NCBI RefSeq assembly: GCF_006345805.1 | Contig: NC_043003.1 | Coordinates: forward strand, 66,340,001 to 66,404,000 | DNA length: 64,000 bases | DNA from: Octopus sinensis | Taxonomy: Eukaryota | Direction of reading: 5' to 3' | In this document: piece by piece, positions 3,322 through 62,345 of the stretch | Layout: every line of letters starts with the position of its first letter | Numbering within the stretch: the stretch's first letter is position 1 | The notes under the pieces: model-generated | What the model saw: the letters and a program-made list of their open reading frames with translations, nothing else | The model's database searches: none | What the model was told of the DNA's origin: nothing | Made by a program: the position numbers and the translations under genes

Positions 3322-3515
3322 CACGCAAACATAAAAACAACCACACATAGACACAATATATCATTCACAGACATCTTTATGTATGTCCGTGTCATTTTGT
3401 AACGTTTCTTATGCGCAAGTACGTCTGCATGCACCTGCATGTCTTTTTCATATCTATATCTATGCATGTATATATGTGCATATGCATGTGTGTATGTATA
3501 TATATATATATGTAT

Positions 3516-3902
3516 AGGTGCAGGAGTGGCTGTGTGGTAAGTAGTTTGCCTACCAACCACATGGTTCCGGGTTCAGCCCCAATGCGTGGCACCTTGGGCA
3601 AGCGTCTTCTACTATAGCCTCGGGCCGACCAAAGCCTTGTGAGTGGATTTGGTAGACGGAAACTGAAAGAAGCTGGTCGTGTATTTATATATATATATAT
3701 ATATATGTATGTGTCCCCACCACAACATCACTTGACAACCGATGGTGTGGTACGTCCCCGTAACCTAGCGGTTCGGCAAAAGAGACGGATTGAATAAGCA
3801 CTAGGCTTATAAAGAATAAGTCCAGGGGTCGATATGCTGGACTAAAGGCGGTACTCCAGTATGGCCGCAGTCAAATGACTGAAACAAGTAAAAGAGTAAA
3901 GA

Positions 3903-7762: not shown

Positions 7763-8037
7763 ATATATGTGTGTAGAAAGAGAGTGAGATGTGTGTGTAA
7801 ATACACACACATACGTTCGTACATAAATTTACTCATATGTCTGCTGTTGTAACGACAACTCTGCGTTCGAAAACTATTTTCACTTACTCTCTCTCTCATT
7901 CTCTCCTCTCTCTCCTTCGTTCTCTCTCCTCTCTCTGTTTCTGTAGGTATGTATCTCTATATATATCTATATATATATTATATATATAATATACATACCC
8001 ACAATTTGTAAAATTCATAATTCTGTTTCTTCACAGC

Positions 8038-8073
8038 TGTCTGACGAACGAACATGTGAAACTCTGAGTAACG
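8038..8073 (+). ncRNA. Type I hammerhead ribozyme motif with canonical core (HHR repeat family 1)
   Basis: tgt-CTGACGA-acg(aaca)tgt-GAA-act(ctg)agt-A-acg: complete CUGANGA/GAAA/GUA core, 3 bp helices II and III, helix I only 3 bp in this copy. Confidence 0.6.
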
Positions 8074-8645
8074 AATTTTGACGTTTTTTTAGGTCTTTAT
8101 TGAAGCATTATATGTGCGTGCGCGCGCGCGCGTGTCTGCGTCTGAGTGTGTAGTTATAGAATTTACCTTGTCTGTTAGATAATTTTTTACCTGTACGTTG
8201 TTAGTTAGCTATCGGCGTATGTTCTTTTAAATATTTATTTCTTATTACAACATATTTCGCTTATCTCAACAAGTTTTCTATTTTTGCAAATAGATTTCTT
8301 TATGTCTTTTACACCATTTACCCACCTCACCACATCCCACCCCTCTCTCGCTCTCTCCCCTTCTCTATCTCCCCGCTCTCTCTCTTCTCTCTCTCATTCA
8401 TTGTCGCTGTTTCTTACTCAAACCTACGTTCTTACACACTCTATTCATCTTATATTCTCTTGATTTTATTTTATTCTTTCTATGTTGTTTTTTTTGTATC
8501 TAATCCGTTATCTCTGCTCCATGGTGAATAATCATCGCTGCTTAATTTACCAAAGTGCTTTAACAATATGCTTTCAATTACAATCGCAATTTGTGCACTT
8601 AAACTCAAATCATTATTTCTAATGAATTATTAATTCTATAACGTC

Positions 8646-9430: not shown

Positions 9431-9641
9431 CAGGGGTCCCGAAAATAGGTTTACAGTTATTAAACAATCTCATTTGCATTCATATATTAACAATTTAAAT
9501 CTTAATTATAAAATAATATGAAACCATTATTCTATGCTAATTTAGTTAAGTGTAAGATAGAAATTTAAATGTAGTAAAACGTTTTAAAAGAAATTTAGAG
9601 TGCCTACGTGATAACTGTAAACTTACTTTTGGGCCATGCTG
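9431..9641. mobile_element. Tc1/mariner-type MITE
   Basis: TA flanks; imperfect TIRs caggggtcccgaaaataggtttacagttat / ataactgtaaacttacttttgggccatgctg. Confidence 0.7.
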
Positions 9642-9664
9642 TATGTATATATATATATAATATA

Positions 9665-9715
<51 letters not shown>

Positions 9716-9744
9716 CCTTTTTTCAGTTTTTTTAAAATTAGTTT

Positions 9745-10096
9745 TAGTAAATTGACTGTGGCTATACTGCAACACCGCCTTTATTCAAACACATCGACTG
9801 CAGGACCTATACTTTGTAAGCCTATTACTTACTCTATCAGTCTCTTTTGCCGAACTGCGAAATTTCGAGGACGTGAACAGATCAACATCGGTTATCAAGC
9901 GATAGTGGAGGGACAAACACACACACTCACACACACACAAATATATATATATTTCCGCCGACGAAATCCACTCACAATGCTTTGGTCGACTCGAGGCTAT
10001 AGTAAAATACACATGCTCAAGGTGCCACGCAGTGGGACTGAATCCGGAACCATGTGGTTGGGAAGCAAGTTTCTAACCACACCGTATACAGGTGCT
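9745..10096 (-). mobile_element. SINE family A
   Basis: Reverse-complement match to head, core and tail of 3516-3903. Confidence 0.85.
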
Positions 10097-10200
10097 TTTT
10101 AATACATTTACGTCAGAGCAATACATAGAATAGATGCACTTTATTTTATTGATCTCTCTATTTATTATGTTTAAAAATGCATACAAACACATACAGAGAA

Positions 10201-11560: not shown

Positions 11561-12339
11561 TAAAATCTTCTTAATAACACCAACAACAATAAAGAAATTT
11601 TCTGGCGAGCAAACCTTGCAATCTACCTGCATTTCTTTGCGAATTCCTAAAAAATTAAATCCTGCAACCTGAAGCTAAAGAGATGGACCTGGTTAAAACA
11701 TTCGATATGCGTAACTGAATTCCGAACAATAACACATCTCCAAATTTAATCAATAAAAATCTTCCATAATGTTTTCTCTTCAGAACCTTCATTGGAACCT
11801 AATTCCTATTGAATTCGACATAGACGATATAAAACCCAGATAAACTGAAATGGACCACAGTCCAACGAAAGCTAAGAAGTTCAAAGGTTCGAGGTTATTG
11901 CCAACGCTGTTCTTCTTAAAGAATTATGATTACATACTTAACGTTGTTTATGCTTCATGAGGAAAACTAACAAAATCGAAACATCGTATAAATTGTCGAC
12001 AAAGTTTGACATAAAATATGAATCTCATTCTTCAGAGCGTGTCGTTTTATCTTTTTACCAAATATTTCAAATAAGCTGGAAAAATTATTAGATTTATTTC
12101 TAAGGTTTTTTATGTTGACATTTTAATCAAAGCCAGAGGAAGTGTTTTTTAAATATCTAATTGTAAATATTAATCGAATTAAAAAAAAACAATGTTGTCC
12201 ATTTGTGTTCGTGTGTGTTTCTGTATGCGTATGTGTATGTATAATATGTAAGGTTACATTTTTATATATCTATATACACACGCACACTTTTATGTATATT
12301 TTTATGTGTAATGTGTGCACTTGTTTCTATGTGTATGTG

Positions 12340-12720
12340 TAGCCACAAGAATGACTGTGTAGTAAGTAGCTTGCTTCCCACATTGTTCCTAGTTCATCCC
12401 CACAGCATAGCACCTTGGGTAAGTGTCTTCTACTATAGCCTCGGACTGACCAAAGCCTTGTGAGTGGATTTGATAGACGGAAACTGAAAGAGGCCCGACG
12501 TATATGTATGTATGTATGAATTTGTGGGTGTGTGGGTGTGTCCCTCCACCACCACTTGTCAACTGATATTGGTATGCTGATGGCCCTGTAACTTAGCAGT
12601 TCGGCACAAGGGCCCAAGTGAATAAGTACTAGGCTTACAAAGAGCAAGTTCGGCAGTCGATCTGCTCGACAAAAGGCGGTGCTCCAGCATCGCCAAATTC
12701 AAATAACTGAAACCAGTCAC
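12340..12720 (+). mobile_element. SINE family A
   Basis: Head, core taacttagcagttcggcacaag and tail aaaaggcggtgctccagcat...actgaaac. Confidence 0.85.
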
Positions 12721-12835: not shown

Positions 12836-14000
12836 GCGAGGGGTATTGAGGACAATTCTGGTATACAATAAAATAACTATATTTCAGCATAAGTAAATAT
12901 GTAGTTGAATAAACATTTGTGCAATTAGACTTGTTAATGATTTTTAAGCAAATTATTCTATGAAACCATCTTCGGCTTCGATGATTGCTTCAATGCGGGA
13001 GCGAAACTGCTGGCATGCTGAAACTATATGATCCTTATTCATTTCGGACATCATCTGGACAATGACGGCCTTCAGTGAAGCTATGGTATTATGAGGATGA
13101 CGATTAGTCTCCTTTTCAACAGTGCTTCATATGTATTAGTTCATGGGGTTCAAATCTGGCGAGTATGGAGGCCACGTATTGAGTGTTACATAATCGTAAA
13201 GATTGTCTGACAACAATTCTTGGTTGACTAGGGTTTTGTGAGAAGGGGCTGAATCGTGATAAAACACACATGGCTTTCCATTGATACTTCATCAATCCAG
13301 GGTTTGATAAAAAATTTTCCAGTACCTCAATCTATCCAGCAGCATTAATTCTTAGACCCTGTGCGAAAAAAGTGGGGAGGGATCACATAACATTTATTAC
13401 TCAATTCTCCTAATACCATCACAGTTGCTGGAAATTTCGTGTGCAGCACTCTGGGTACCTCAGAAGGATCTGCACTTAACCACCTGCCATGCTCGTTCAT
13501 GAGGGTTTTTTACTTTAAGTAATCGTTTTGAACGGATGAGACGGTTTTCCTGTGTCTTTTCAGACACAAATTGGCAATTTCTCATTACATAGGACCTGCA
13601 CCGAATGTCACGTTGTACAAGAATTCAGACAGTCCACTCTGACACCCGAAGTTCTTTAGCAATTAACCTCATTGTTCTGAGGTTTTCATGGATAATGTTT
13701 TGAACATGTATAAATTCCGGTATACTTCTAGTATCTGAGCATTGTGAATTTTCTTTTTCCTCTTTGATACAGGGGAAAAAGTTCCATCACAAACTTTCAA
13801 TTCCAACCAAACTTTGTGTACAAATGATCAACATTTAGAAAGCTGGACATTTCTAAATCACCGTGGTTTGCATGTATAACAACTATGATTACATGTCTTT
13901 TCATTTCTTGAGTTAGCATGATAACTTCAAAGGGTTATGTCGAAAAAAAATTTTAATGTGTAAAAATATGAAAATGAAATGCCCTCCAAAACCTCTCGCA
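12836..14000 (-). mobile_element. Tc1/mariner superfamily (DD37D/maT-like) transposon relic
   Basis: Minus-strand peptides TKFPATVMVLG...VIPPHFFAQGLRINAAG*IEVLE and TWPPYSPDLNPMN; decayed cgaggg-type TIRs at both ends. Confidence 0.85.
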
Positions 14001-15479: not shown

Positions 15480-16158
15480 TCTTATTATCTAGTGTAACAA
15501 TTTAAAAATGATAATAACAGAATCAATAATATAGGCGACTGCAGGCCGAAAAAACGCATTAAATAGCTGAAGGATTAAAATTAATCGAAGGATATACTAA
15601 GTATGTCTACTTGCTGGAAATAACAGTCAAATATATTATTTAACTCGCCAGAATACACTGATAGTAACTACAGAAATCAACCGTCCGAAGGCAAACGGGC
15701 TAAGATATATTTCTTTACTACCCACAAGGGGCTAAAGACAGAGGGGACAAACAAGGATAGACAAACGGATTAAGTCGATTACATCGACCCCAGTGCGTAA
15801 CTGGTACTTAATTTATCGACCCCGAAAGGATGAAAGGCAAAGTCGACCTCGGCGGAATTTGAACTCAGAATGTAACGGCAGACGAAATACGGCTACGCAT
15901 TTCGCCCGGCGCGCTAACGATTCTGCTAGCTCGCCAAGATAATGTCCCAGCATACATTCACACGGACCGGTTCCTGCACTGGTAAAAATAGCCTTAGTAC
16001 GTATTACCATTTATTGTCCAGTGTAACAGTCTAAAATGATAATAAAAGAATCAGTAATATTAGCGATTGTAGACCACAGAAAAGGATTAAATAAATGAAG
16101 GCTTAAAATTGATCATATGATATACTAATTATATCTACCTGCTGGAAATAACATTCAT

Positions 16159-16160
<2 letters not shown>
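15480..16160. repeat. Diverged local direct repeat (15480-15630 vs 16010-16160) flanking a SINE B
   Basis: Both carry agtgtaaca...aaaatgataataa-agaatca-taatat...gaagg-ttaaaatt...atatactaa...tgctggaaataaca. Confidence 0.7.
15700..15937 (-). mobile_element. SINE family B, full length
   Basis: Reverse complement ggcgagctagcagaatcgttagcgcgccgggcgaaatgcgtagccg...gagttcaaattccgccgaggtcgac...gtttgtcccctctg. Confidence 0.88.
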
Positions 16161-16204
<44 letters not shown>

Positions 16205-16205
16205 G

Positions 16206-16236
<31 letters not shown>

Positions 16237-16299
16237 TGTGTGTGTGTGTGCATAAAATTCATTTGGAAGAAGATGCGTGGCGTTCAATTATATAATAAT

Positions 16300-17085
16300 A
16301 TAAATATATTCAACCTCACCAATGTCCTATTTATGGAGCAATCTGTACTCAGACCAAATAGGGCGAATAACATTCTGGATCTCTGCTTCACGAACAATAT
16401 GGACATCATTCATGATGATAAAATGACACCGACATTAGTCTCGGATCACAACATAATAAACATGTCTATGTTTGGGCCGAAAGTAACCAAAGACATACAG
16501 ACTAGGTAGGAGCTGCCTGACCCAGCTCTTGTAACATTATGTCTAAGTGTTGAGGCAGTTACTCAACAATTCAAATGTGGGCGTAATGTACTTTGATTTT
16601 GTAAAAGTTTTTGACAAGATGGATCATGATATGATATGTCACAAACTGCGTGACCTTGGCATAGCTGGAAAACTTGGAGAGTGGTTACATGACTTCCTGA
16701 AAGATAGGAGTCAGGCGGTAGTGGCTAATGGAGCATTTTATAGTGGCCCTCTCAGATAAACCCTCAAATGCCCGGATAGCCACCCTTGCAAGTTATGCAG
16801 ATGATACGAAAGTCTCGCAGAAAATACAGAACCCCAGCGATGTTGCACACCTGCGGCAGGAGTTGGACTCAATTTACAGATGGGCTGAGGATAATAATAT
16901 GCAGTTTAATGCTGAATCATTCCAAGCCCTGCGCTACTAACATCCAAAACTGAATATGAAACTTACAGATTACACCGGTCCATAGGGAATTTCAATCCCA
17001 GAACCTAATTCAGTGAGGGACCTGGGTATCGACATGAGTGATGATACCTCTTTCCAAGTGCACATTACCAGAATGACGACAAATT
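16300..17085 (+). mobile_element. CR1-like LINE ORF2 relic (APE end and RT), internally deleted
   Basis: RPNRANNILDLCFTNN...SDH; YFDFVKVFDKMDH...KLRDLGIAGKLGEWLHDFL; SYADDTKV...WAEDNNMQFN; VRDLGIDMS. Confidence 0.9.
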
Positions 17086-17271
17086 TTAAATTTGAGAGCA
17101 CTGAAAAAATTGAACATACCTATCCGATTCAAGTAACATCAGACAAATTATATCCAATGACCAGTACCAACGAATTCAAAACATACGAATGAGGTCTCGT
17201 GTTCTTCCTCATCCACCCACGTGTGTTGTGAGTAAAAATATTCTACAGAAAAAAAACTGTAGTTTATTATC

Positions 17272-21282: not shown

Positions 21283-22397
21283 AGTTAACGTCTTTGGTTA
21301 CGTCTGAAAACTTTATCCAAAACACCTGAAAGAGTATCCTGTGTTGTCTCTGTATAGAAAGATAGTCGCTCATCTTCTACTCGTTGATAATTGAAAGAAA
21401 TTGAAATACGATGATCAGTTAATAATACGCTTTATATATACAGTTTATATACTTTATGGACAATTTTATAGACTTAACACACAGCACTCATAAAATAAAT
21501 TTTCACTCTTATTGTTGTATTTTTCCCATAAAGAAAAAAAATCGCCGTACATATGATACAACCTTTAGTTAAATTGCACATATTTGCCACATAAATAAGC
21601 GTTAATATTTAACGGAATTGCACTTATGCGTTAAGTGATGGATGGTATAAATATATTAGTTCAATTAAAAGAAAAATTACACTTTCACTATTCAATCACC
21701 GCCGCCACTTCCTTCCTCTTCTCTAGTCACATAAAAGCGTTACCGACGGGCCAAGTAACGCAATGATAAGCAGAGTTATTATAAGATACACAGTAAATTT
21801 ATCCTAAATTTGTTAATATATTTGCTGATTTTATATTATTTAACTTAATTTTGCTTCTCAGTATTTCTAATGAGCTGTTTTCACCTCTAAAATTGGATAC
21901 CTTTTTTTCAACAACTCTTCAGATATTCTGATATTTCCTGGTGCTCAAAACATATTTAATGATACCCCTTAATAGCTTAATAACACCCTAACAGATTAAA
22001 TACTCAGCTTTTATTACATCTGCGGTATTTTCGTCCTTTTCTCTCCCCCGCTGTTTTTTAATGATCACCCCCACGGCTGTCGTAATTTGAAAAATGTTTC
22101 AATTTGCATATATTTACAAGACACATTTTAATGTCCTTTCTATTTATTTTCTCTTTATTCCTATTAACATTTCCTCTCTATTTCCTATGGTATGTTCCTT
22201 CTATATCCTCTTTTATTTCTTATCCATTAATTCTTAAATTCTATCCGTTTTCTGAATGGGTTTCTACTACCGTTTCTTCGTAAATGGGTGTGGATACATA
22301 CTTTAAATGTCATTCTCAATGACTGGGCGTAAACATAGTCAGAATGTTAAGAATATAAGTGAGGATGTCTGAGTGCCATAAAAATATATGTTTCATA

Positions 22398-22655
22398 GGC
22401 GCAAACATGGCTATGTGGTTAAGAAGCTTGCTTTGCAACCATGTGGTTTCAGGTTCAAATCCGCAGCGTGGCACCTTGGCTGTGATTCCTGCTATGGCCT
22501 CGAGCTGATCAATATTTTGTAAAGGCAAAAGAAACCGATAGAATAAGTACCAGGCTTTAAAAGAATAAGCACAGAGGGGGATTAGTTCAAATAAAATTTC
22601 TTGAAGCCGGTGCCCCAGCATGGCCACAGTCTAATGACTGAAACAAGTAAAGGAA
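22398..22655 (+). mobile_element. SINE family A (internally deleted)
   Basis: tggctatgtggttaagaagcttgc...ggttcaaatcc...ggcaaaagaaaccgatagaataagtac...gactgaaacaagtaaagg. Confidence 0.85.
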
Positions 22656-27012: not shown

Positions 27013-27549
27013 TGGCAGAAGCTCTCGTGGCTTCTGATCTTAACTGATTGGAAGTGTTATCATGTACATTGTTTTGTCTTGGTATAAAAGATGGGCCACA
27101 GCAAATATTCTGCTCAATACCACAGATTTGCTTGTCAGTTATTTGACCTCAACAAGTTGAGCATGTCTCTTAGTGGCTGATGATATGTGCATCTCTGATC
27201 ACGAGCCGAATTAGTTGGGGAGCATCATAGCCATGTGTTGAGAGGCATTCTTTGGGGCTTGGATAATTCATCTCTAGAAATATGGGTGTTTCGTTCAATA
27301 TCCTTAAACAATCCTTATTCAGGGACCTTTTGAGCGGATGGGTTACTTGACCAGAAGAAAACTCTAACTGTGCCCCACCTGCAAGGTCATCTGCTGTTTA
27401 TCTTGATATGAGATCACCATGTCACGCACATATTGTTGTGATGCATGAGCCTGGTGTGCCCTTATCAGATGGGTAGTCATGATGGGTATACTGGGCTCCG
27501 TATATCTTACCCCAGTCTCACTTTTATGGCATGCACTGCTCTCACACTC

Positions 27550-27550
<1 letters not shown>
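27013..27550 (+). mobile_element. Unclassified ~540 bp interspersed repeat bounded by (AAT)n, probably non-LTR derived
   Basis: Complex-sequence block embedded between (AAT)n tracts and ending ...cacactcaataataat; no ORF. Confidence 0.45.
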
Positions 27551-27604
<54 letters not shown>

Positions 27605-27620
27605 TAATAATAATAATAAT

Positions 27621-28020
27621 CAAACGCCGTCGTCTGGATATTGTCATATTGAATAAGAGAGACAAATGTTGTCAGATCATTGATGTAGCAATACCAAATG
27701 ACATGAATGTTGTGAGTAAAGAGGTTGAAAAAATCCCCAAGTACTCCGAATTGAAAGTGGAAACGGCAAGACTGTATGGAATGCGAGTGGGTAATGTATG
27801 AGTGATACCAGTGGTGATCGGAGCGTTGGGCTCAATCCCATTGAAACTTCAAGATTTTTTAAGGCAACTGGAAATCCCATGCAAGATTGATGTCTTCCAA
27901 AAACAGCCTTATTGGGCACAGCGCACATCTTAAGGAACGTATTATCTGTATGAGGTCCTTGTGATATGACAGATGACTAAAGACTCCGATGCATTTTACC
28001 TACACTGCGTTATGAAGGAA
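27621..28020 (+). mobile_element. R4/Dong-type LINE 3' end (restriction-like endonuclease), copy 1
   Basis: KRRRLDIVILNKRDKCCQIIDVAIPNDMNV..KEVEKI.KY.EL...VIPVVIGALG...QKTALLGTAHILR: PD-(D/E)xK RLE motif; (AAT)n on both sides. Confidence 0.88.
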
Positions 28021-28060
28021 TAATAATGATAATAATAATAATAATAATAATGATAATATA

Positions 28061-28121
<61 letters not shown>

Positions 28122-28518
28122 CAAACGCCGTCGTCTGGATATTGTCATATTGAATAAGAGAGACAAATGTGTCAGATCATTGATGTAGCAATACCAAATG
28201 ACATGAATGTTGTGAGTAAAGAGGTTGAAAAAATCCCCAAGTACTCCGAATTGAAAGTGGAAACGGCAAGACTGTATGGAATGCGAGTGGGTAATGTATG
28301 AGTGATACCAGTGGTGATCGGAGCGTTGGGCTCAATCCCATTGAAACTTCAAGATTTTTTAAGGCAACTGGAATCCCATGCAAGATTGATGTCTTCCAAA
28401 AACAGCCTTATTGGCACAGCGCACATCTTAAGGAACGTATTATCTGTATGAGGTCCTTGTGATATGACAGATGACTAAAGACTCCGATGCATTTTACCTA
28501 CACTGCGTTATGAAGGAA
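28122..28518 (+). mobile_element. R4/Dong-type LINE 3' end, near-identical tandem copy 2
   Basis: Same 5' truncation point caaacgccgtcgtctgg; differs from copy 1 by single-base deletions. Confidence 0.88.
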
Positions 28519-30639: not shown

Positions 30640-31460
30640 CACATTGAAACTTCCCTTCTTATACCTGTCTGTCTGTCCGTCCCCCGCTCTCTCATCCTTA
30701 CACAGACTTTCTCTCTCTCAGCCATTCTTACTCTATCTCTCTCTCTCTCTCATTACTTCTCTCTCGGTCATACACAAACTTTATCTCTCTCTTTCTCAGC
30801 CATTCTTACTCACTCAGTCTCTCTCATTACATCTCTCTCACTTATCCTTACACAAACTTTTCTCTCTCTCTCTCTCTTTCTCTCTCAGCTATTCTTACTC
30901 TCCTTCTCTCTCTCTCTCTATCATTACCTTTCTCTCGATCATACTTACACAAACTTTCTCTCTCTCTCTCTCTCAACCATTCTTACATATTCTCTCTCTG
31001 TCTGTTTTTCTCTCTCTCTCTCATTAACTCTTAATCCGTCATACTTGCACAAACTTTTCTCTCTCCCACCCTCTCTCTCCGTCTCACTCTCAGCCATTCT
31101 TACTCACTCATGCTCTCTCTTTCTCTCTCTCTCTCTCTCATTACCTCTCACTCAGTCATTTTTATAAAAAAAATTCCTCTCTCAATCTCTCTCACTCTCA
31201 CATTACCTCTCCCTCGGTCATCCTTACACAAAATCTCTCTCTCTCTATCTATCTCAGCCATTCTCACTCACTCTCTCTCTCTCATTCTCTGACGCTCGTC
31301 CTTGCAAAATTTTTTCTCTCCCTCTCGCTCTCTCTTTCTCTTTCATTACTTCTCTCTCGGTCATCCTTACACAAACATTCTTTTGGCTCTCTCTTTTTCT
31401 CTTAGCCATTCTTACTCACTCTCTTGTCTTAGTAGCTCTCTCTTGGTTATCCTTACACAA

Positions 31461-31500
<40 letters not shown>

Positions 31501-31966
31501 CATTCTTACTCACTCTCTTGTCTTAGTAGCTCTCTCTTGGTTATCTTTACACAAACCTCTCTCTCTCTCTCTCTCTTAGCCATTCTTACTCACTCTCTTG
31601 TTTTAGTAGCTCTCTCTTGGTTATCCTTACACAAACCTCTCTCTCTCTCTCTCTCTCTCTCTCTTAGCCATCCTTACTCACTCTCTTTGTCTTAGTAGCT
31701 CTCTCTCGGTTATCCTTACACAAACCTCTCTCTCGCTCTCTCTCTCGCTCTCTCTCTCGCTCTCTCTCTCTCTTAGCCATTCTTACTCACTCTCTTTGTC
31801 TTAGTAGCTCTCTCTTGGTTATCCTTTCACAAACCTCTCTCTCTCTCTCTTACTCTTTTAGTCAGTTCTAATCATTCTTTGCTCTCTCTCTCTCTCTCTC
31901 TCATTACTTCTATCGGTTATCCTTACATGAACTTTCTCTCTGCCTCTCAGCCATTCTTACTCACTA

Positions 31967-31998
<32 letters not shown>

Positions 31999-32700
31999 AG
32001 CCAATCTTATTCTCTCTCTCTCTCCCTTATTACTTTTCTCTCGCACTACCCTACACTCAGTAATCCTTACTCACCCACTCTCTCTCTCTCTCTCATTACT
32101 TCTTTCTCGGCGATCCTTACAGAAACTTTTTCCGCCTCTCTCTCTCTATCTTTCTCTCATTACCTTTTTCTCGTCATCCTTACACAAACTTTCTCTCCCT
32201 CTCACTGTCCGTCAACCATTCCTACTCTCTCTCTTTCTCTCTCCCTGTCAGCCAATCTTACTCTCTCTCTCTCTCTATCTCTCCTTTTTCCTTAGCTCTC
32301 TCTCTCTCTCTCTCACCCTTACACAAACTTTTCTCTCTCAGTCTCTCAATAGTTCCTCTTTACCCACTCTCTCTCTTTCTCTCTGCCATCCTGCAATCCT
32401 CTTGCTCTCTATCTCTCTGCCACCCTGCTGCCCTCTCTCTCTCTTTCTTTGTCCCTTTGTCCCTATTTCTTTTTTCTCTCTTTGTCTCTCTCTCTCCCTC
32501 TCTTATATTCTCTCTCACTCATTCTTACACACACACACACACTTTCTCCCCCTCTCTCTCTCTTTCTCTGTCTCTATCTATCTCTCTCTTTCTCTACTAT
32601 CCTTACACAGAGTCTCGCTCTCACTCATTCTCATACACACACTCTCTCTCTCTCTCTTTCTGCCATTTTCTCTCTCCCTTTTTTTCTCTCCCCACACCCA
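30640..32700. repeat. (CT)-rich tract with a ~70-80 bp higher-order repeat
   Basis: Recurrent cttagccattcttactcactctc...ttagtagctctctcttggttatccttacacaaac units, homogeneous at ~31390-31850 and diverged outwards. Confidence 0.9.
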
Positions 32701-37110: not shown

Positions 37111-37225
37111 GAGGCACTAAGCACTTAAAAGTGTTTGGTACCCTCGTATACTATTCAAACTATAAACAATAATTAACCATAGAATAAAGTTTATTCTTTC
37201 CAAATGAAACAAAGCTAACAGTAAT

Positions 37226-37466
37226 ACTCTTTACTCTTTTACTTGTTTCAGTCATTTGACTGTGGTTATGCTGGAGCACCGCCTTTGGTCGAGCATATCG
37301 ACCCTAGGACTTATTCTTTGTAAGCCTAGTACTTATTCTATCGGTCTCTTTTGCCGAACCGCTAAGTTACACGCCAGAATCGGTTGTCAAACGATGTTGG
37401 GGAGACAAACACAGACACACAAACATATATACGCACACATACATTCATACATACATACACACATAC

Positions 37467-37510
<44 letters not shown>

Positions 37511-37575
37511 GACGCAGTGGGACTGAACCCGGAACCATGTGGCTAGTAAGCAAGCTACTTACCACACAGCCACAC
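37226..37575 (-). mobile_element. SINE family A, well preserved
   Basis: Tail, core gccgaaccgctaagttac, internal (TA)n, head gcagtgggactgaacccggaaccatgtgg. Confidence 0.9.
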
Positions 37576-37639
37576 TTGCACCTGCACCTGCATTTTTGTA
37601 AACTTTATAGTATTTATAATACAAGATTTATAACATAAT

Positions 37640-42713: not shown

Positions 42714-42876
42714 TGTAGTAGTAGTAGTAGAGTAGTAGTAGTAGTAGTAGTGTAGTAGTAGTAGTAGTAGTTGGAGTAGTAGTAGTAGTAGTAGTTGGAG
42801 TAGCTGTAATAGTAGTAGATTTAGAGTTACATATTTCTAATATTGTAATATTCTGATTTTGTATATATTATATGTA

Positions 42877-43426
42877 CAAGAGTGTCTCAAAATGTAATGC
42901 CATTTTGTATAGGACAGGTATAATTACCAACACAGAAACATGTATCATACAACAATATGAAGCTGGTCCTCTGTGGATCAAATCTCTACTTCTCAACATA
43001 GTCACCGTTTCTTTCAATAGCAATGTTCCACCTTCAAATGAGAGCATGTATCCCTGCCCCGTAAGATTGTATTTACTGTTCTTTGAGCCACTTCTTCACT
43101 ACCTCCACACTCACCAGATTTAGTGCCTTCAGACTATCATCTCTTCAGCGCCACGAAAGAGGGTTTGAGAGGCAAATATTATTCCAGTAATAAGGAAGTG
43201 AAAACTGTAGTGAAAGAGTGGCTCAAAGAACAGTCAACAGAATTTTACGGGGCAGGGATACATGCTCTCATTCGAAGGCGGAACATTGAGAGAAACGGTG
43301 ACTATGTTGAGTAGTTGGGATGTGATCCACAGAGGGCCAGCTTCATTTTGATGTATGATACATATTCCTGTGTTGGTAATTATACCTGTCCTAAACAAAA
43401 TGGCATTACTTTTTGACTAACCCTCG
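42877..43426 (+). mobile_element. Non-autonomous mariner (DD34D-type) with its 3' ~190 bp duplicated in inversion at the left end
   Basis: TA flanks; PHSPDLVPSDYHLF...EEVKTVVKEWLKEQSTEFY.AGIHALIRR; 42877-43070 is the reverse complement of ~43240-43426. Confidence 0.9.
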
Positions 43427-43439
43427 TATATAAAAAAAA

Positions 43440-45859: not shown

Positions 45860-47560
45860 TGGACAGTAAATGTTGTAAACTTAGTAATTAACACATTCTA
45901 ATTAGTAACCAAGTTAGTGACCTGAAGAATCGGTAGCACGTCGTACAACATAATGCTTTGTGGCATTCTCTTGTTCTGAGTTCAAATTCCGCCGAGGAAG
46001 ACTTTATCTTTCATTTTTTCGAAGATCAAAATTCCAAGCCTTGTACCTACAATAGAAAGGATCATTATTATTTGATGAAAACTCTGTTTATTTTGCTGGG
46101 TATGATGGAAAGTGTCAGTTGTCCACAGCCAGCAGAACTAAAGTTGCACTTGTTTACTGGTCGTGCTTCAAGAACCCTGCGAAGAATTCTTGCAGTTCCA
46201 AGCAATGCTGGCTTTTGAAGGTATTCTACATGGACAATAAATGTTGCAACTTAATATTTAACACTTTCTAATTATTAGCAAGGTAGTGACCTGAAGAAAC
46301 GTTAGCACGGAGAACATAATGCTTGGTGTTGGTATAATTCCCTCATTCTGAATTCAAATTCCACCAATGAAGACATTATCTTTCATCTTTTCGAAGTCGA
46401 TGAAATAAGTACCAGATAAAACCTGGGGTCGACATACTTGAATTAACTCCACCCTCAAAATTCCTGGCCTTGTACCTACAATAAAAAGGATTATTATTAT
46501 TATTATTATTTGATGAAAACTCTGTTCAATTTGTTGGGCATGATGGAAAGTGTCAGTTGTCCACAGCCAGCAGACTAAGGTGATACTTGTTTACTGGTCG
46601 TGCTTCAAGAACCCTGCGAAGAATTCTTGCAGTTCCAAGCAATGCTGGCTTTTGAAGGTATTCTACATGGACAATAAATGTTGCAACTTAATATTTAACA
46701 CTTTCTAATTATTAGCAAGGTAGTGACCTGAAGAAACGTTAGCACGGAGAACATAATGCTTGGTGTTGGTAGAATTCCCTCATTCTGAATTCAAATTCCA
46801 CCAATGAAGACATTATCTTTCATCTTTTCGAAGTCGATGAAATAAGTACCAGATAAAACCTGGGGTCGACATACTTGAATTAACTCCACCCTCAAAATTC
46901 CTGGCCTTTTACCTACAATAAAAAGGATTATTATTATTATTATTATTTGATGAAAACTCTGTTCAATTTGTTGGGCATGATGGAAAGTGTCAGTTGTCCA
47001 CAGCCAGCAGACTAAGGTGATACTTGTTTACTGGTCGTGCTTCAAGAACCCTGCGAAGAATTCTTGCAGTTCCAAGCAATGCTGGCTTTTGAAGGTATTC
47101 TACATGGACAATAAATGTTGCAAACTTAATATTTAACACTTTCTAATTATTAGCAAGGTAGTGACCTGAAGAAACGTTAGCACGGAGAACATAATGCTTG
47201 GTGTTGGTAGAATTCCCTCATTCTGAATTCAAATTCCACCAATGAAGACATTATCTTTCATCTTTTCGAAGTCGATGAAATAAGTACCAGATAAAACCTG
47301 GGGTCGACATACTTGAATTAACTCCACCCTCAAAATTCCTGGCCTTGTACCTACAATAAAAAGGATTATTATTTATTATTATTTGATGAAAACTCTGTTC
47401 AATTTGTTGGGCATGATGGAAAGTGTCAGTTGTCCACAGCCAGCAGACTAAGGTGATACTTGTTTACTGGTCGTGCTTCAAGAACCCTACGAAGAATTCT
47501 TGCAGTTCCAAGCAATGCTGGTTTTTGTAGATGTTCTACATAGACAGTAAATGTTGCAAA
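45860..47560. repeat. ~437 bp tandem repeat (3 near-identical units plus diverged flanks); unit = SINE B relic + R4/Dong 3' end
   Basis: gatgaaaactctg recurs at 46074, 46512, 46949, 47385; minus strand of the unit encodes QKPALLGTARILRRVLE. Confidence 0.93.
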
Positions 47561-47975: not shown

Positions 47976-49779
47976 TAAGGATAATAATAATAATAATAAT
48001 GATAATAATAATAATAAACAAACAAGTTTTTGAGTCGCGCAGATTGTTGGTTTCTCAGTCAAAAAATCTCACTAAGTTCCTTGATCATTCCCAGGATACC
48101 TACACCAACAGAGATGGTTTTGGTTTTTAATTGCCACGTCGTAGGTATCTTAATCTCAAAGTCCTTATATTTCGACAGTTTTTCAAATTTCTTTGTTGGG
48201 ATATTTCTTTCAGAAGGCACTGTCGTATCATTTAACAGGCATGTTTTTTTTTTCTTTTGGTTTGTAACTTCGTTTGGGTTTTTGGTCTCCTTATGTCTTT
48301 CTGTGACATTAGCAGTTTTTAATAAACTTTCTTCCCTATTAACTACATAGGAATCTATATCTAATCTAGCTAACTCCATGCAGTCGTCTGCTGATATTAA
48401 CACTTTTCCGCCTTCCTTTCTAGGTACGTATTATCATGCTACTCCTGCCCTTGGGTAGAGTCCTCCTTTCATATTGAATTCTTTCCTAGTGCTTCTGTCT
48501 AGCGTTGCTAATTCAGTTTTTATCTAATCTTCAAAAGCTGATGAGTATCTAAGTAACGATACTGCCCAAATAGTTACAGGCTTCACTGGATTCGGACCAT
48601 TTAGCTTTGACTTCATTAGCTTTCTCGCCCTTCTGATGTATTCCTTCTCAATTTTTTTGTCATTTCTGTAGCTAGAACTCTGTCAGATTCTAATACTTCT
48701 ATACACTTATAACTCTCTCCTCCTTTTAATTATTTTAATGTCTGGCCATCAAGTAATTGGGTGCCTTCCCTGTTGACTACCTGCCCGCTTCTCATGACTA
48801 ATACTGCATACTTATCTATGCCAAATTCCATCTCTATAATTTTGCTGGAGAGTCCTACAGACTGTATTAAAGAATCTATCTCTTTTTCATTCTTAACAAA
48901 ACGCTTCAAATCATCCATGTTGTGCAAATGGTTAATTTTTTATTACCATTTCTGAACTGATACCCTGCCCTTGCTTTCCTTAATACTAATCAAACATAAG
49001 GGGATCAAACATAAGATGAATATTAAAGGGGACAACGAGGGTCTCTGGAAAATTCCTGTTTTAATATTAACTTTTCCGACGATTATGTCACATGAGTAGC
49101 GATATACTTCCCATTACTTCATGTTAATGCTAATTATTTCTCTTATGTTGTCTGCTCTACTGATTTTACTCAAACATTCACTTATCCATGGATGTGGGAT
49201 CATGTCATAGGCGTTCCTATTATCTATCCATGTTATGTTAAATTTTTCATTCTAATTTTACTTCATTTAGAACTGCTTTGTCTATCTATATATATATAAC
49301 AGAGGCTATGTGTCTGTCTGTGTGTCTCTCATGTCGATATAACTCGCGATTCACCCAACCGATTTTAATGAAATGTTACACATGCATTACAAAGGGTTCC
49401 ATGAAGTGTCATGGATCAAAACAATTTTCAACTTCTTGCCTAATGAGGGTTCAGGGGCGGATAAACCGCATCTTTTAAGCATTTTCTTTTAAGATTATCC
49501 AGTCACTTTCCTCCAAGTTTGCAGCAAAAAATTAATCAGGCACGTCGAATTGCTTTTGACTAATTTCTGACGCCTGACTATGCCTCCCCACTCCCCGAAA
49601 AAATGCGGATGAATCTGAGTTGAGTATACGGCACTTGGTTTTATCTTTGCTTTAGGCCATTTTCCAACGATAAAATATTGATACTACTGATGCATTATAA
49701 GTAGCATATAATATTTTCTTCAATTTAGCTGCAATCATTTCCTTTACCTCCATCCCCAATATGGAGAAATCGTTTAACT

Positions 49780-50015
49780 GAGGTTAAAGAAAACATTCAG
49801 TTAGTAGTGCAAGAGCTAGATCCTGAAATGCTTCAAAATGTTTCACAACGATAAGGAGAGATTTGAAGTATGTTGTGATACAGACATGTTGAAAATTTCC
49901 AATAAAAGTTTGACGTCAGATTTATAAGTCTGTTTTGGTAATAAACATAAAATTCTGTCAGTATTTTAAAAATTTGCTCAATTTCATTGAAACAGTTAAT
50001 TATAGAACATCCTGC
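49780..50015 (+). mobile_element. Tc1/mariner-superfamily transposase C-terminus relic nested in the Helitron
   Basis: LTEVKENIQLVVQELDPEMLQNV...HVE, then a TIR-like ttatagaacatcctg. Confidence 0.45.
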
Positions 50016-50147
50016 ATGGTGCAGCGTTGTTAGTTGTTGCGTTGCTCGAAGAAATATTAAAATCAAAGTCTCCTCGCTGTAAACATCTCCTCTTTTTGTT
50101 AAGCATATTGTATCAACGAGTATATTATCCAAAATGTATCTCTCCTT

Positions 50148-50272
50148 TAGAGGTGTGGTTGTGTGGTTGAGAAGCTTGCTTTCCAACCATGTCGCCTTGG
50201 GTTCAGTCCCACTGTGCGGCACGATGGGAAATTCACATTCATCAAGCTCCGTGCCAACCAAAGCCTTGTGCA
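50148..50272 (+). mobile_element. SINE family A head nested in the Helitron
   Basis: gtgtggttgagaagcttgctttccaaccatg...ggttcagtcccactg...ccaaagccttgtg. Confidence 0.75.
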
Positions 50273-51404
50273 TATATAATTGCCATTACTGTATTGATAT
50301 ATAAAATAACACATACAACTCACTTACTATTGTCATATAATAAACAAACAGAAGTTCGTGTATGAAACTGATCTTTTTCTACTTCAATTATTACATGTTT
50401 TTTTCTTATAAAATACACACATACAGGAGGGTTAAACCTATATATATAATAACACTTTGAATGTGGCTCCCAAGAAAGAGTAAAAGTAATTACCCGATCA
50501 ATGACGGGTATTACTGCTAGTATATAATAGATCATGCGTTCCTCTAGACTTCCTCCTGTAAACTTTCTGTCCTTCTGGTAGTAAGTACTGATTGTCAAGG
50601 TATTCGCAAATGCTTTCTGAAAGCATTCCTGTTAACATCTTCCACATTAATGGTAAGCACGGGATTGGTCTATAACTGCTAATTGTATTACCCTTGCTCT
50701 TATCCTTCACAATGAGTATTGTCCACCCTCTAGTCATCCAAGCTGGTATTATTCCTCCATTAAGGCAATCCTGAAGTTGTTTTCTCAGCCTCCCACGTAA
50801 ACTACTGAATTTTTTTAGCAAGTACCCTTGCACTAAATCTTGTCCTAGGCCCTTCCAAATAAGCATTTTTCCTAACACTTTACTCATTAATGCACTAGTT
50901 AATCTTAGATCTCGCTGCTTCTCAATACTCCTTACCTCATTTTCTTTAACCATACTGCATCTCCTTTATGACTGTTTTATCCCAAATATTACTCCAGAAC
51001 TTTCTACTTTCCTCTGCATTAGGTTTCTCATCTTCAGTACTTCGTTTTCCACTATTTGGTTATAAAACCCCCTTTGGTCTGTCTCCAATAATCTATTCTG
51101 TTGATACTGATCTACTATTTTCTGATATCTGGAGAGCTTGCCTACTACTGCTATTATACGCTGTTTCAACTCTTCTATGACTGTCCCAAATCCTTGCCCT
51201 TTGACTAAATATCTTTCCTCGAGGCAAGATTTACATCAGGTGTTTCATAACTTGTTTGTTTTCCAGGCTTCTATTCTACTTAGATCTTGTCTTAAAGTCT
51301 TCACTTATTTTTAGTCTCATTTCCACCTTTGCTCTTTTTTAATCTTTCCCTGTGAGATATTTAAATTTCTGGTGACTTGTTTTCTATATTTTTAGTAGGA
51401 GTAG

Positions 51405-55090: not shown

Positions 55091-55243
55091 CTGATGCATG
55101 TTCATTCACCTTTGGTGATTGCGGTTTTATTGAATACGTTTATTCTTTAGTAATTCAAGATATCTTTACGTAATTTTGGTAAATATAACTCCTAAAATGA
55201 GATGTCGGTATTATTATTATCATTTTTTCATTATATGGACGAC

Positions 55244-55427
55244 AATATACTTTATTAAACAGCGGCAAAAAATATCACAAACTGTTACTCAGAGTTTCAC
55301 GTTCCCGTTCTTGCGACACTTTCGTTTAGAATTTAAAATTCTTAACAAAACTGCCCAACGAACGGGAACGTGAAACGCTGAGCAACAGTTTTTGTGATAT
55401 TTTTGCTGCTTTTTAATAAAGCATATT
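55244..55427. mobile_element. Palindromic element formed by two inverted HHR family 1 units
   Basis: Arms tttattaaacagcggcaaaaaatatcacaaactgttactcagagtttcacgttcccgttc / gaacgggaacgtgaaacgctgagcaacagtttttgtgatatttttgctgctttttaataaa. Confidence 0.85.
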
Positions 55428-55872
55428 AATCTACCTCTGGTATACGTGTACTATTTTTTCCCACCTTGTTTCGCATTTATGTGATTAATCTGGTATATAT
55501 ATATATGGCAACAAATAATGTACATGCCCAACATTAATATTGCTTTCTGCTGATGCACTTTGTCGTGCCAATCCTACATTCATATACGCACGCATGTTTG
55601 TATGTGTCTAATAAGTTCTAGTTATATTTTCTGCTTAATAAAGTCTTTACTTTGGTAAGGAGTCACATATTACGCTAATGTCTAATGATCTAAGTCTTAG
55701 CAAGAAACCATCACACACGTATACAAATGTGTGTGGGTGTGTGGGTGTGCGGGTTTGTAAGCGTTTATGAGTGTGTGAGTGCGTGTGTGTTACTTACCCT
55801 TCTCTTTTCTTTTTTCCTTTAGTATAATAGATACATTTTTTCAAGCATTATTTCCAAGCGTCCTACTTCAAA

Positions 55873-57239: not shown

Positions 57240-57395
57240 TGTTTTTTTCTCTCTGTGTATCTTTCTGTTGAAGAGCGTAGGCTCGAAACGTTAAAGACTT
57301 GTTTTATTTATATTTCCTGAGCGCCATACTAATACAATTGTTCGTTTGTTTTCCACCTGCCTTCGTCTTTTGTCTATTTTCATAAAGCTTCCCGT

Positions 57396-57400
<5 letters not shown>
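57240..57400 (+). mobile_element. HHR family 3 repeat
   Basis: tcttt-CTGTTGA-a-gagc(gtag)gctc-GAA-ACGT-T-aaaga at 57260-57297. Confidence 0.72.
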
Positions 57401-57431
<31 letters not shown>

Positions 57432-57475
57432 ATATATATACATACATACATACATACATATATATATATATATAA

Positions 57476-57515
<40 letters not shown>

Positions 57516-57519
57516 TATA

Positions 57520-57918
57520 TAGGAGTGGCTGTGTGGTAAGTAGCTTGCCTACGAACCACATGGTTCTGGGTTCAGTCCCACTGCGTGGCATCTTGGGCAA
57601 GTGTCTTCTGCCATAGCCCCGGGCCGACCAATGCCTTGTGAGTGGAATTGGTAGACGGAAACTGGAAGAAGCCTGTCGTATATATGTATATATATATATG
57701 CGTGTGTGTGTTTGTGTGAGTGTGGTTGTCCCCCTAGCATTGCTTGACAACCGATGCTGGTGTGTTTACGTCCCCGTCATCTAGCGGTTCGGCAAAAGAG
57801 ACCGATAGAATAAGTACTGGGCTTACAAAAGAATAAGTCCCGGGGTCGATTTGCTCGAATAAAGGCGGTGCTCCAGCATGACCGCAGTCAAATGACTGAA
57901 ACAAGTAAAAGAGTAAGA
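57520..57918 (+). mobile_element. SINE family A, full length (best-preserved copy)
   Basis: aggagtggctgtgtggtaagtagcttgc...ctagcggttcggcaaaagagaccgatagaataagtact...aaaggcggtgctccagcatgaccgcagtcaaatgactgaaacaagtaaaagag. Confidence 0.92.
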
Positions 57919-61709: not shown

Positions 61710-61927
61710 AAAAAATATGCATTAAAATGGAATAAAAAATGATGTTAAATTATTTTTAAAATCGTAGACTCATCGTAGACGCGCGCTAATACACAGACGG
61801 GCTCGATATGAATCACGACTATAAGATACCCGAATTTGGTTAAACTGCACCGCAAAATGTTGGAGTAGTTAGGAATCTAAATCGAAGGGGACAGACACTC
61901 ACACAACTACTGTTTTATATATATAGA
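61710..61927 (-). mobile_element. Second Helitron 5' portion, same family as 60817-61411
   Basis: gactcatcgtagacgcgcg...gggctcgatatgaatcacgactataagataccc...ggaatctaaatcg; TC 5' end at 61927. Confidence 0.85.
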
Positions 61928-62250
61928 TATATATATACCAAAGTGAGTTCATACATGTGAATCAATTTGGGAAAAATAGTACTCGATTACGAGAGGTAGA
62001 GTAATATGCTTTATTATTATTAAAGCTGAAAAAATCACAAAATTATCATGATAAACTATAGGTTTTAATTTTTGATTCAAGGTTTTCTTCGATGTCACAT
62101 AATACGATTTTAAATCTATCATTTATTAGAAAAATTATAAACCGTTAGTCGATAGGACCAATGGAAAAGAAAACAATTTCAAATGTGTATCTGTCGAAGC
62201 AAATTGTATATTTTATACATACAAACTTTATTTTGTTCAATTCTCAATCT

Positions 62251-62345
62251 AAACTGACCGACGATCGGGAACGTGAAACTCTGAGATGCAGTATTTTGTG
62301 ATATTTTTGTAATGTTTTTGCAGCTTTCAGAATAATAAAGTATAG
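62251..62345 (+). mobile_element. HHR family 1 unit, decayed
   Basis: aaactga-ccgacga-tcg(ggaa)cgt-gaaactctgagat-gcagtattttgtgatatttt. Confidence 0.7.

What the first reader, a model, noticed from the sequence alone, without database searches (positions are those of the whole stretch)
8038..8073. Repeat family whose four-copy consensus is a fully canonical hammerhead
Seen: the copy at 8041 has a perfect core (CUGACGA, GAAA, GUA). Copies at 55279(-), 55347 and 62251 supply helix II ACG-GGAA-CGU and a longer helix I. Merged by eye they give AAACUGU-CUGACGA-ACG-GGAA-CGU-GAA-ACU-CUG-AGU-A-ACAGUUU, i.e. a 7 bp helix I, a tetraloop helix II and a closed 3 bp helix III. Each genomic copy has different lesions, as expected for neutral decay from an active ancestor (inference). 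A repeat annotator would probably label this family a MITE.
Basis: partly seen in the sequence, partly recalled or inferred. Interest (0 to 1): 0.78.

Follow-up and report, generated by a model that had tools for sequence, protein, structure and literature searches.

The report
Decayed repeat with hammerhead-like motif
A short, old repeat in this AT-rich animal genome contains a stretch that looks like a minimal hammerhead ribozyme. No copy is intact, and the "fully canonical" consensus appears only if the best base is picked from each copy. It is at most a dead relic of a well-known kind of element.

Summary
The sequence facts hold. Four copies sit at the stated coordinates, and I found a fifth, 5'-truncated copy. 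Only the copy at 8041 has an exact CUGACGA / GAAA / GUA core.

The "fully canonical four-copy consensus" does not hold:
- The plurality consensus reads CCGACGA. The essential U4 is T, G, C, C in the four copies.
- The variants CTG (8041) and CCA (55347) are the two expected CpG-decay products of CCG. 8041 is also the most diverged copy.
- Helix II opens with A-U instead of G10.1-C11.1. Helices II and III are each 3 bp.
For copy 8041 it costs +5 kcal/mol.
- No Rfam hammerhead model reaches E<=10, even on a 60-nt slice.
- No helix pair shows a compensatory change.
- A motif as good as 8041 is expected 0.02 times per random 64-kb window.

The family looks like a dead retroposon. Copies are 59-83% identical, one is 5'-truncated, two of three loci are head-to-head inverted pairs, and 3' ends abut (TA)n. 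This is the insertion style of Penelope-like elements, which carry minimal hammerheads. No RT or GIY-YIG coding sequence lies nearby.

I could not obtain genome-wide copies, so the founder's core remains unresolved. Interest is low.

The parts
7995..8129 (+). Repeat copy c8041, solo and the most diverged (59-67% identity to the others). It is preceded by (TA)n at 7958-7988.
   Evidence: nhmmer E=9e-31; pairwise identities; TA runs
8038..8073 (+). Hammerhead-like segment of c8041. It has an exact core: CTGACGA 8041-8047, GAAA 8058-8061, GTA 8068-8070. Helix I is only 3 bp including a G-U, and helix II is ACG/TGT with a G-U.
   Evidence: The hammerhead fold costs +5.0 kcal/mol. No Rfam hammerhead match at E<=10 on a 60-nt slice.
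55229..55333 (-). Repeat copy c55279rc, the left arm of a head-to-head palindrome. Its hammerhead-like segment is 55279-55322 with core CGCAAGA.
55334..55508 (+). Repeat copy c55347, the right arm of the palindrome. Its hammerhead-like segment is 55347-55390, with core CCAACGA and a broken helix III. This is the long form, with about 100 nt more after AATAAAGCATATTA, ending in (TA)n at 55494-55506.
55326..55341 (.). Centre of the palindrome (AGAATTTAAAATTCT), where the two 5'-truncated arms meet with no spacer.
   Evidence: Rfam sub-threshold hairpin hits over 55252-55419, for example MIR6140 at 53.9 bits against a gathering score of 140.
62215..62344 (+). Repeat copy c62251. Its hammerhead-like segment is 62251-62294, with core CCGACGA, a U-U at 10.1-11.1 and an A-A at 15.1-16.1. 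It ends in (TA)n/(TG)n from 62346.
61917..62050 (-). Fifth copy f61988rc. It is 5'-truncated just after the hammerhead-like segment, so it lacks that segment. It is the long 3' form, 81% identical to c55347 over 91 nt, and ends in (TA)n at 61916-61937. It lies head-to-head with c62251, about 165 nt away by the copy coordinates (62050 to 62215).

Best explanation
These are five old, dead copies of a short interspersed repeat that behaves like a retroposon. The short form is about 130 nt and the long form about 230 nt.

What the sequence shows:
- Copies are 5'-truncated to different extents.
- Their 3' ends abut (TA)n microsatellites.
- Two of the three loci are head-to-head inverted pairs with the 3' ends pointing outward.

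Inferred: this is the insertion style described for Penelope-like elements and their non-autonomous derivatives.

Inside each full copy is a 44-nt segment that resembles a minimal type-I hammerhead. The founder of these copies most likely read CCGACGA, with C at the essential U4. It had an A-U instead of the G10.1-C11.1 pair, and 3-bp helices II and III. The one perfect core, at 8041, is best explained as a CpG-to-TpG transition in the most decayed copy.

I expect no self-cleavage from any copy here, and probably none of consequence from their immediate founder. The "fully canonical" consensus comes from taking the best base in each column. Whether a deeper ancestor was a working hammerhead of a Penelope-like element remains open.
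For: Consensus:
- Majority consensus is CCGACGA.
- The U4 and G5 columns read T,G,C,C and G,C,A,G. CTG in 8041 and CCA in 55347 are the two CpG-decay products of CCG.
- 8041 also turned the ACGTG CpG into ATGTG, and it is the most diverged copy.
- My rough likelihood estimate favours CCG over CTG by about 2- to 13-fold (inference, not a tool result).

No support for a hammerhead:
- No Rfam hammerhead family matches at gathering score or at E<=10.
Its hammerhead fold is -4.5 kcal/mol, 0.4% of the ensemble. For 8041 the hammerhead fold is +5.0 kcal/mol.
- There are 0 compensatory pairs, and pairing is no better than shuffles.
- Chance expectation is 0.01-0.02 per window.

Retroposon-like behaviour:
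- A 5'-truncated fifth copy and a shared long 3' end.
- Two inverted pairs.
- Three of four 3' ends fall on (TA)>=4 runs, which cover 4.8% of the window.
- Published Penelope-like features match: inverted 5'-truncated copies and (TA)n targets (PMC8557442), and dual motifs on opposite strands (PMC4209133).
Against: - Only four informative copies from one window, and two of them are arms of one palindrome. The founder's base at U4 is therefore weakly determined.
- Apart from that one base, the plurality consensus satisfies every core position and all three helices, including a 7-8 bp helix I. That is a 1-in-100-per-window coincidence if unrelated to hammerheads.
- Helix III plus its loop (ACUCUGAGU) is quasi-palindromic and could form the inter-molecular helix of a double hammerhead. 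The duplex is -9.9 kcal/mol, and the cofold dimer is -21.1 against 2 x -6.6 for monomers. This is how metazoan type-I hammerheads work.
- The Penelope-like insertion style raises the prior for a real hammerhead origin.
- No RT or GIY-YIG coding sequence was found near any copy, so the Penelope-like link rests on arrangement alone.
Confidence: 0.55

Rival explanations
1. True hammerhead relic. The founder read CUGACGA and was a working, probably weak and dimer-dependent, minimal type-I hammerhead. It sat near the 3' end of a Penelope-like element or of a short non-autonomous derivative, and it processed the element's transcript 3' of GUA. The copies here have since decayed neutrally.
For: - The consensus is one base from a complete core, with all three helices present.
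- Copy 8041 has the exact core.
- Helix III and its loop are quasi-palindromic and can form a dimer. This is a hallmark listed for Penelope-like hammerheads (PMC4209133).
- Inverted pairs with motifs on opposite strands, 5' truncation and (TA)n association match Penelope-like behaviour (PMC4209133, PMC8557442).
- Hammerheads and Penelope elements are reported in cephalopods: 235 Rfam Hammerhead_1 hits in the giant squid (PMC6962438).
Against: - U4 is present in 1 of 4 copies, and the variants there fit decay from CCG.
- There is no G10.1-C11.1 pair, no bulged base after A9, and helix II is 3 bp rather than 4-8 bp.
- No Rfam hit at E<=10.
- The fold is marginal and there is no covariation.
- No Penelope-like coding sequence lies nearby.
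Confidence: 0.3
2. A DNA-transposon derivative: a MITE or foldback element that targets TA dinucleotides, as Tc1/mariner-type elements do. The long inverted arms are its terminal repeats, the solo copies are half-elements, and the hammerhead resemblance is chance.
For: - The 55.3-kb locus is a nearly perfect 170-nt palindrome.
- The copies are associated with TA-rich sites.
- Tc1-like and mariner-like transposase remnants are present in the window.
Against: - I found no target-site duplication at either pair.
- The arms are of unequal length, with one long and one short 3' form in each pair.
- One copy is 5'-truncated, and the 62-kb pair has a spacer of well over 100 nt.
- An AATAAA signal lies near the 3' end.
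- The repeat profile finds no copy anywhere else in the window, including around the transposase remnants.
Confidence: 0.1
3. The palindromic loci are expressed as long hairpin RNAs and serve as small-RNA (siRNA or miRNA-like) precursors. The hammerhead-like segment would simply be part of the stem.
For: Sub-threshold Rfam matches of 55252-55419 to several long-hairpin miRNA families.
Against: All scores are far below gathering thresholds (53.9 against 140 bits). Those models match any long inverted repeat. There are no expression data, and the solo copies have no partner arm.
Confidence: 0.05

Closest known systems
Minimal hammerheads of Penelope-like elements (Cervera & de la Pena 2014, PMC4209133)
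   Same: - Type-I topology, short helix III with a quasi-palindromic loop, and no loop-loop tertiary contacts.
- Motifs are scattered through the genome as single truncated copies, or as pairs on opposite strands about 100-700 bp apart.
- Sequence is very heterogeneous between copies, and the published motifs cleave weakly or not at all as monomers.
   Different: - Helix II is 3 bp here, not 6-8 bp.
- There is no unpaired base between A9 and 10.1.
- The 10.1-11.1 pair is A-U, not G-C.
- Helix I is 7-8 bp, not 4-5 bp.
- The plurality core has C at U4.
- No flanking RT or GIY-YIG reading frame was found.
Naiad-type Penelope-like elements with "HHR_core" only (Craig et al. 2021, PMC8557442)
   Same: - They prefer (TA)n insertion sites and form inverted 5'-truncated copies.
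- They are present in cephalopods only as old remnants.
- Some carry core-like strings that do not fit hammerhead stem and loop descriptors.
   Different: I could not compare sequences because the paper's consensus files are not held. No Naiad coding remnant was detected next to the copies.
Animal non-LTR retrozymes with type-I hammerheads (PMC7229834; bioRxiv 10.64898/2026.07.22.740005)
   Same: They are short, AT-rich, non-coding repeats with a type-I hammerhead, thought to be non-autonomous derivatives of Penelope-like elements. Some of their hammerheads work only as dimers.
   Different: - Retrozymes are head-to-tail tandem arrays of 170-400 nt units. The copies here are solo or in inverted pairs, never tandem.
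- Retrozyme hammerheads have 4-bp helix II, G10.1-C11.1 and usually loop 1-loop 2 contacts.
Rfam hammerhead families (I, II, III, HH9, HH10; names and count from my own knowledge, not from the tool output)
   Same: The order of core strings and helices is the same.
   Different: No match at gathering score, nor at E<=10 on slices of 60-350 nt.

Membership tests
Hammerhead ribozyme (type I) | All conserved core nucleotides in one molecule: C3 U4 G5 A6 G8 A9, G12 A13 A14, A15.1-U16.1 and H17. | tested here: inconclusive
   Met by copy 8041 only. The other three copies each have 1-2 lesions in CUGANGA, and two also lose the A15.1-U16.1 pair. The plurality consensus has C at U4.
Hammerhead ribozyme (type I) | Helix II that opens with the G10.1-C11.1 pair and is usually at least 4 bp long. 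| tested here: not met
   A-U in three copies and U-U in 62251. Helix II is 3 bp plus a GGAA loop.
Hammerhead ribozyme (type I) | The three-helix fold is a stable, accessible structure. | tested here: not met
For 8041 the hammerhead fold is +5.0 kcal/mol. A generic designed hammerhead folds at -19 kcal/mol as its MFE.
Hammerhead ribozyme (type I) | Match to a curated covariance model. | tested here: not met
   No hammerhead family at gathering score or at E<=10 on slices around all copies.
Hammerhead ribozyme (type I) | Helices maintained by compensatory changes among family members. | tested here: inconclusive
   0 of 13 pairs show a change on both sides, and 11 of 50 cells are unpaired. There are only four sequences, and neutral decay after insertion would look the same.
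Hammerhead ribozyme (type I) | Site-specific self-cleavage 3' of position 17. | not testable with these tools
   This needs in vitro transcription or mapping of RNA ends.
Canonical metazoan type-I hammerhead | Loop 1 or a bulge in helix I that contacts loop 2. | tested here: not met
   Helix I of the consensus is an uninterrupted AAAACUGU/ACAGUUUU duplex with no internal loop.
Penelope-like element minimal hammerhead | Located in the terminal repeat of an element that encodes RT and a GIY-YIG endonuclease. | tested here: not met
   Pfam scan of open frames in 4.5-11.5 kb and 52.5-64 kb found only a Tc1-type HTH domain. Copy similarity stops about 40-50 nt upstream of the motif. Published work says most such motifs lie in truncated copies, so this does not exclude the link.
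Penelope-like element minimal hammerhead | Unpaired base between A9 and 10.1, a long helix II (6-8 bp), and G10.1-C11.1. | tested here: not met
   The sequence reads CUGACGA-ACG-GGAA-CGU-GAA. No register gives these features (PMC4209133).
Penelope-like element minimal hammerhead | Palindromic 15.2-16.2 and loop 3, allowing a dimeric active form. | tested here: met
   ACUCUGAGU is a quasi-palindrome with a central U-U. The self-duplex is -9.9 kcal/mol and the cofold dimer is -21.1 kcal/mol. It is intact in 2 of 4 copies.
Penelope-like element insertion style | Inverted 5'-truncated copies, motifs on opposite strands close together, and insertion at microsatellites such as (TA)n. | tested here: met
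   Two of three loci are head-to-head pairs. Three of four 3' ends fall on (TA)>=4 runs, which cover 4.8% of the window.
Non-LTR retrozyme | Head-to-tail tandem array of 170-400 nt units, each with a hammerhead. | tested here: not met
   nhmmer finds no direct tandem copies.
MITE | Terminal inverted repeats flanked by a target-site duplication, with uniform length. | tested here: inconclusive
   Inverted arms exist at two loci. However, I saw no duplication, the arms are unequal, one copy is 5'-truncated and two copies are solo.

The most novel reading that the evidence does not exclude
The founder was a working minimal type-I hammerhead of an unusual design: an A10.1-U11.1 pair, a 3-bp helix II capped by GGAA, and a 7-8 bp helix I. 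It would have been carried by a very abundant, (TA)n-targeting, non-autonomous derivative of a Penelope-like element in this (probably cephalopod) genome, and active as a dimer through its quasi-palindromic helix III.
Probability: 0.25. Interest if true: 0.4.

Novelty: new member of a known kind. Interest (0 to 1): 0.2.

Why it matters
If the founder really cleaved, this would add a cephalopod family, with an atypical helix II, to the already long list of hammerhead-bearing retroelements in animals. That is useful for repeat annotation and for the question of how Penelope-like elements and their parasites are processed, but it is not surprising.

If it did not cleave, the case shows how merging decayed repeat copies by eye can manufacture a canonical motif, especially at CpG sites. 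The hammerhead literature has already warned that relaxed minimal descriptors give mostly false positives (PMC6155905).

Tried and rejected
Getting more copies of the family, which is the decisive test, failed by every route available:
- Exact-pattern scan of metagenome contigs gave one unrelated chance hit, L001.
- Scans of prokaryotic genomes and viral contigs gave nothing.
- A protein search with six-frame peptides across the repeat found 8000 word-sharing candidates, none at E<=10.
- Protein searches with transposon fragments from the window returned only short Logan, ENA, JGI or NCBI contigs of about 1-5 kb, plus one bird chromosome. None gave a long locus from this or a related species.
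- Supplementary consensus files of the Penelope-like element paper are not held.
- A literature search for retrozymes in cephalopods found nothing.

Ideas rejected:
- The 3' extension shared by two copies as a separate target repeat. It occurs nowhere else in the window.
- Alternative registers that would give a bulge plus a G-C opening pair in helix II. None exists.
- LINE twin-priming as the source of the inverted pairs. Both arms cover the same part of the element.

The source organism was not identified. It is consistent with the repeat content (inference) but was not tested.

Full report
**Observation**

The window reads as the finding says. At 8038-8073 the + strand is ctgtCTGACGAacgaacatgtGAAActctgaGTAacg. 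The core strings are at 8041-8047, 8058-8061 and 8068-8070.

Related segments lie at 55279-55322 (-), 55347-55390 (+) and 62251-62294 (+). The 17-mer GAACGTGAAACTCTGAG with up to three mismatches occurs four times against 0.11 expected. A profile built from the four copies finds them at E = 1e-25 to 1e-32. It also finds one weaker 3'-end fragment at 61988-62042 (-). The repeat family is therefore real.

**The consensus**

The four heptamers in the CUGANGA box are:
- CTGACGA (8041)
- CGCAAGA (55279, minus strand)
- CCAACGA (55347)
- CCGACGA (62251)

MAFFT's majority consensus in two separate alignments is AAAACTGT-CCGACGA-ACG-GGAA-CGT-GAA-ACT-CTG-AGT-A-ACAGTTTT. The essential U4 is taken from one copy only.

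That copy is the most diverged of the four, at 59-67% identity to the others. The others are 70-83% identical among themselves.

The variants at positions 4-5 are informative. CTG (8041) and CCA (55347) are the two products of CpG deamination of CCG. In 8041 the ACGTG CpG of helix II has also become ATGTG. A back-of-envelope likelihood, using a star tree or one shared subfamily branch and CpG transitions several-fold faster, favours CCG over CTG as founder by about 2- to 13-fold. This is my inference, not a tool result. That U4 is required for activity rests on established mutational work on the hammerhead core, cited from my own knowledge.

**Is it a hammerhead by other criteria?**

- No Rfam hammerhead family matches any copy at gathering score. 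None matches at E<=10 on slices of 60 to 350 nt.
Its hammerhead fold is -4.5 kcal/mol, 0.4% of the ensemble.
- The hammerhead fold of copy 8041 is +5.0 kcal/mol. A generic designed hammerhead gives -19 kcal/mol as its MFE.
- Helix II is 3 bp and opens with A-U (U-U in 62251). Natural hammerheads, including those of Penelope-like elements, have the G10.1-C11.1 pair (PMC4209133).
- Helix I is an uninterrupted duplex with no loop 1, so the tertiary contacts of canonical animal type-I hammerheads are absent.
- On the four-copy alignment, 78% of cells pair. This is no more than in shuffles, and no pair has a change on both sides.

**Chance**

I wrote a descriptor requiring an exact CUGANGA, GAAA, A15.1-U16.1, H17, and three helices of at least 3 bp with G-U allowed. 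It finds only the 8041 site in the window. In 400 first-order Markov sequences of 64 kb it is expected 0.02 times per window. A motif of the quality of the plurality consensus (up to 1 core mismatch, helix I at least 6 bp) is expected 0.01 times.

This is unlikely for one window. Across a multi-gigabase genome it would occur hundreds of times. The hammerhead review (PMC6155905) notes that relaxed minimal descriptors gave mostly false positives.

**What the element is**

A longer alignment shows that the fragment at 61917-62050 (-) is a fifth copy.
- It is truncated at its 5' end just after the hammerhead-like segment.
- It shares with the 55347 copy about 100 nt beyond AATAAAGCATATTA, at 81% identity over 91 nt. 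That stretch occurs nowhere else in the window, so the family has a long and a short 3' form.
- It lies head-to-head with the 62251 copy, about 165 nt away by the copy coordinates. It shares a small insertion with that copy.

The 55279 and 55347 copies form an exact head-to-head palindrome with no spacer. Two of the three loci are therefore inverted pairs with 3' ends pointing outward.

Three of four 3' ends run into (TA)>=4 tracts, and the solo 8041 copy is preceded by one. Such tracts cover 4.8% of the window.

Variable 5' truncation, a constant 3' region with an AATAAA, and no visible target-site duplication point to a retroposon rather than a cut-and-paste MITE.

Inverted 5'-truncated copies and a (TA)n target bias are described for Penelope-like elements (PMC8557442). 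Their minimal hammerheads are reported as scattered single motifs, or as pairs on opposite strands 100-700 bp apart (PMC4209133). Hammerhead_1 matches and Penelope elements are reported in a cephalopod genome (PMC6962438).

Against this link, a Pfam scan of open frames around all copies found only a Tc1-type HTH domain and no RT or GIY-YIG domain. The link therefore rests on arrangement only.

**A point in favour of a real hammerhead origin**

Helix III plus its loop, ACUCUGAGU, is a quasi-palindrome. Two consensus molecules cofold at -21.1 kcal/mol, against -13.2 for two monomers, with an inter-molecular helix III. Animal type-I hammerheads with short helix III work as dimers in this way (PMC4209133, PMC7229834).

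**Verdict**

The most likely reading (0.55) is a dead retroposon-like family whose founder carried a hammerhead-like segment that was one base short of the core and atypical in helix II. No copy here should cleave.

A true hammerhead founder of the Penelope-like or retrozyme kind remains a serious rival (0.3). A TA-targeting MITE with a chance resemblance is a minor rival (0.1).

Either way the finding belongs to a well-described class and is of low interest. I could not run it because none of the available collections gave me more DNA of this species.

Noticed in passing
window 3395-3727(-), 9599-10099(+), 12330-12698(-), 22319-22630(-), 37208-37635(+), 49836-50285(-), 57307-57776(-): A recurrent repeat whose translations all contain strings like PRSGTEPGTMWLVGKLLTTQP or CGFEPETTWLQSKLLNH. 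It looks like a tRNA-derived SINE present in many copies on both strands (inference).
   Followed up: no
window 16129-17189(+): A LINE fragment with an endonuclease piece (Pfam Exo_endo_phos_2, E=1e-4) followed by RT motifs (YADD). The best relatives are about 1000-aa proteins with RT and endonuclease domains from short Logan and ENA contigs, 50-60% identical.
   Followed up: partly
window 48946-51235(-): A second, frame-shifted LINE RT region. The 151-aa ORF at 50498-50953 has only two relatives in the protein collection, 63% and 70% identical, both from Logan contigs.
   Followed up: partly
window 59411-60077(-): A truncated Tc1-like transposase (Pfam HTH_Tnp_Tc3_2, E=2.5e-14). It lies about 2 kb from the 62-kb repeat pair, and the repeat profile finds no copy around it.
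   Followed up: partly
window 12956-13827(-) and 42868-43435(+): Two mariner-type transposase remnants (WPPYSPDLNP and HSPDLVPSDYHLF motifs). The second lies between 151-nt inverted repeats that are 87% complementary (I12).
   Followed up: no
window 46357-47463(-): Three tandem units spaced about 440-460 nt apart. Each encodes nearly the same peptide, TSITLVCWLWTTDTFHHAQQIEQSFHQIII.... This is an unclassified tandem repeat.
   Followed up: no
window 27367-27831(-) and 27999-28331(-): Two copies, about 630 nt apart, of a segment encoding AQRSDHHWYHSYITHSHSIQSCRFHFQFGVLGDFFNLF... on the strand opposite a LINE-tail-like ORF (KRRRLDIVILNK...IPKYSELK). Each is interrupted by an (AAT)n-type tract.
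   Followed up: no
window 30707-32630(+): A CT-rich array with a family of about 89 nt and 21 copies (D20). It contains a recurring CTCAGCCATTCTTACTC motif.
   Followed up: no
window, whole: Composition: 34.5% G+C, CpG observed/expected 0.85, TG+CA observed/expected 1.17. There are 169 (TA)>=4 tracts covering 4.8% of the window. The mild CpG depletion bears on the CCG-to-CTG argument.
   Followed up: partly
window 55252-55419 and 7941-8004: Sub-threshold Rfam matches to miRNA hairpin families (MIR6140 at 53.9 bits against a gathering score of 140; mir-297 at 29.8 against 90). They reflect a long inverted repeat and a (TA)n tract, not miRNA genes.
   Followed up: yes
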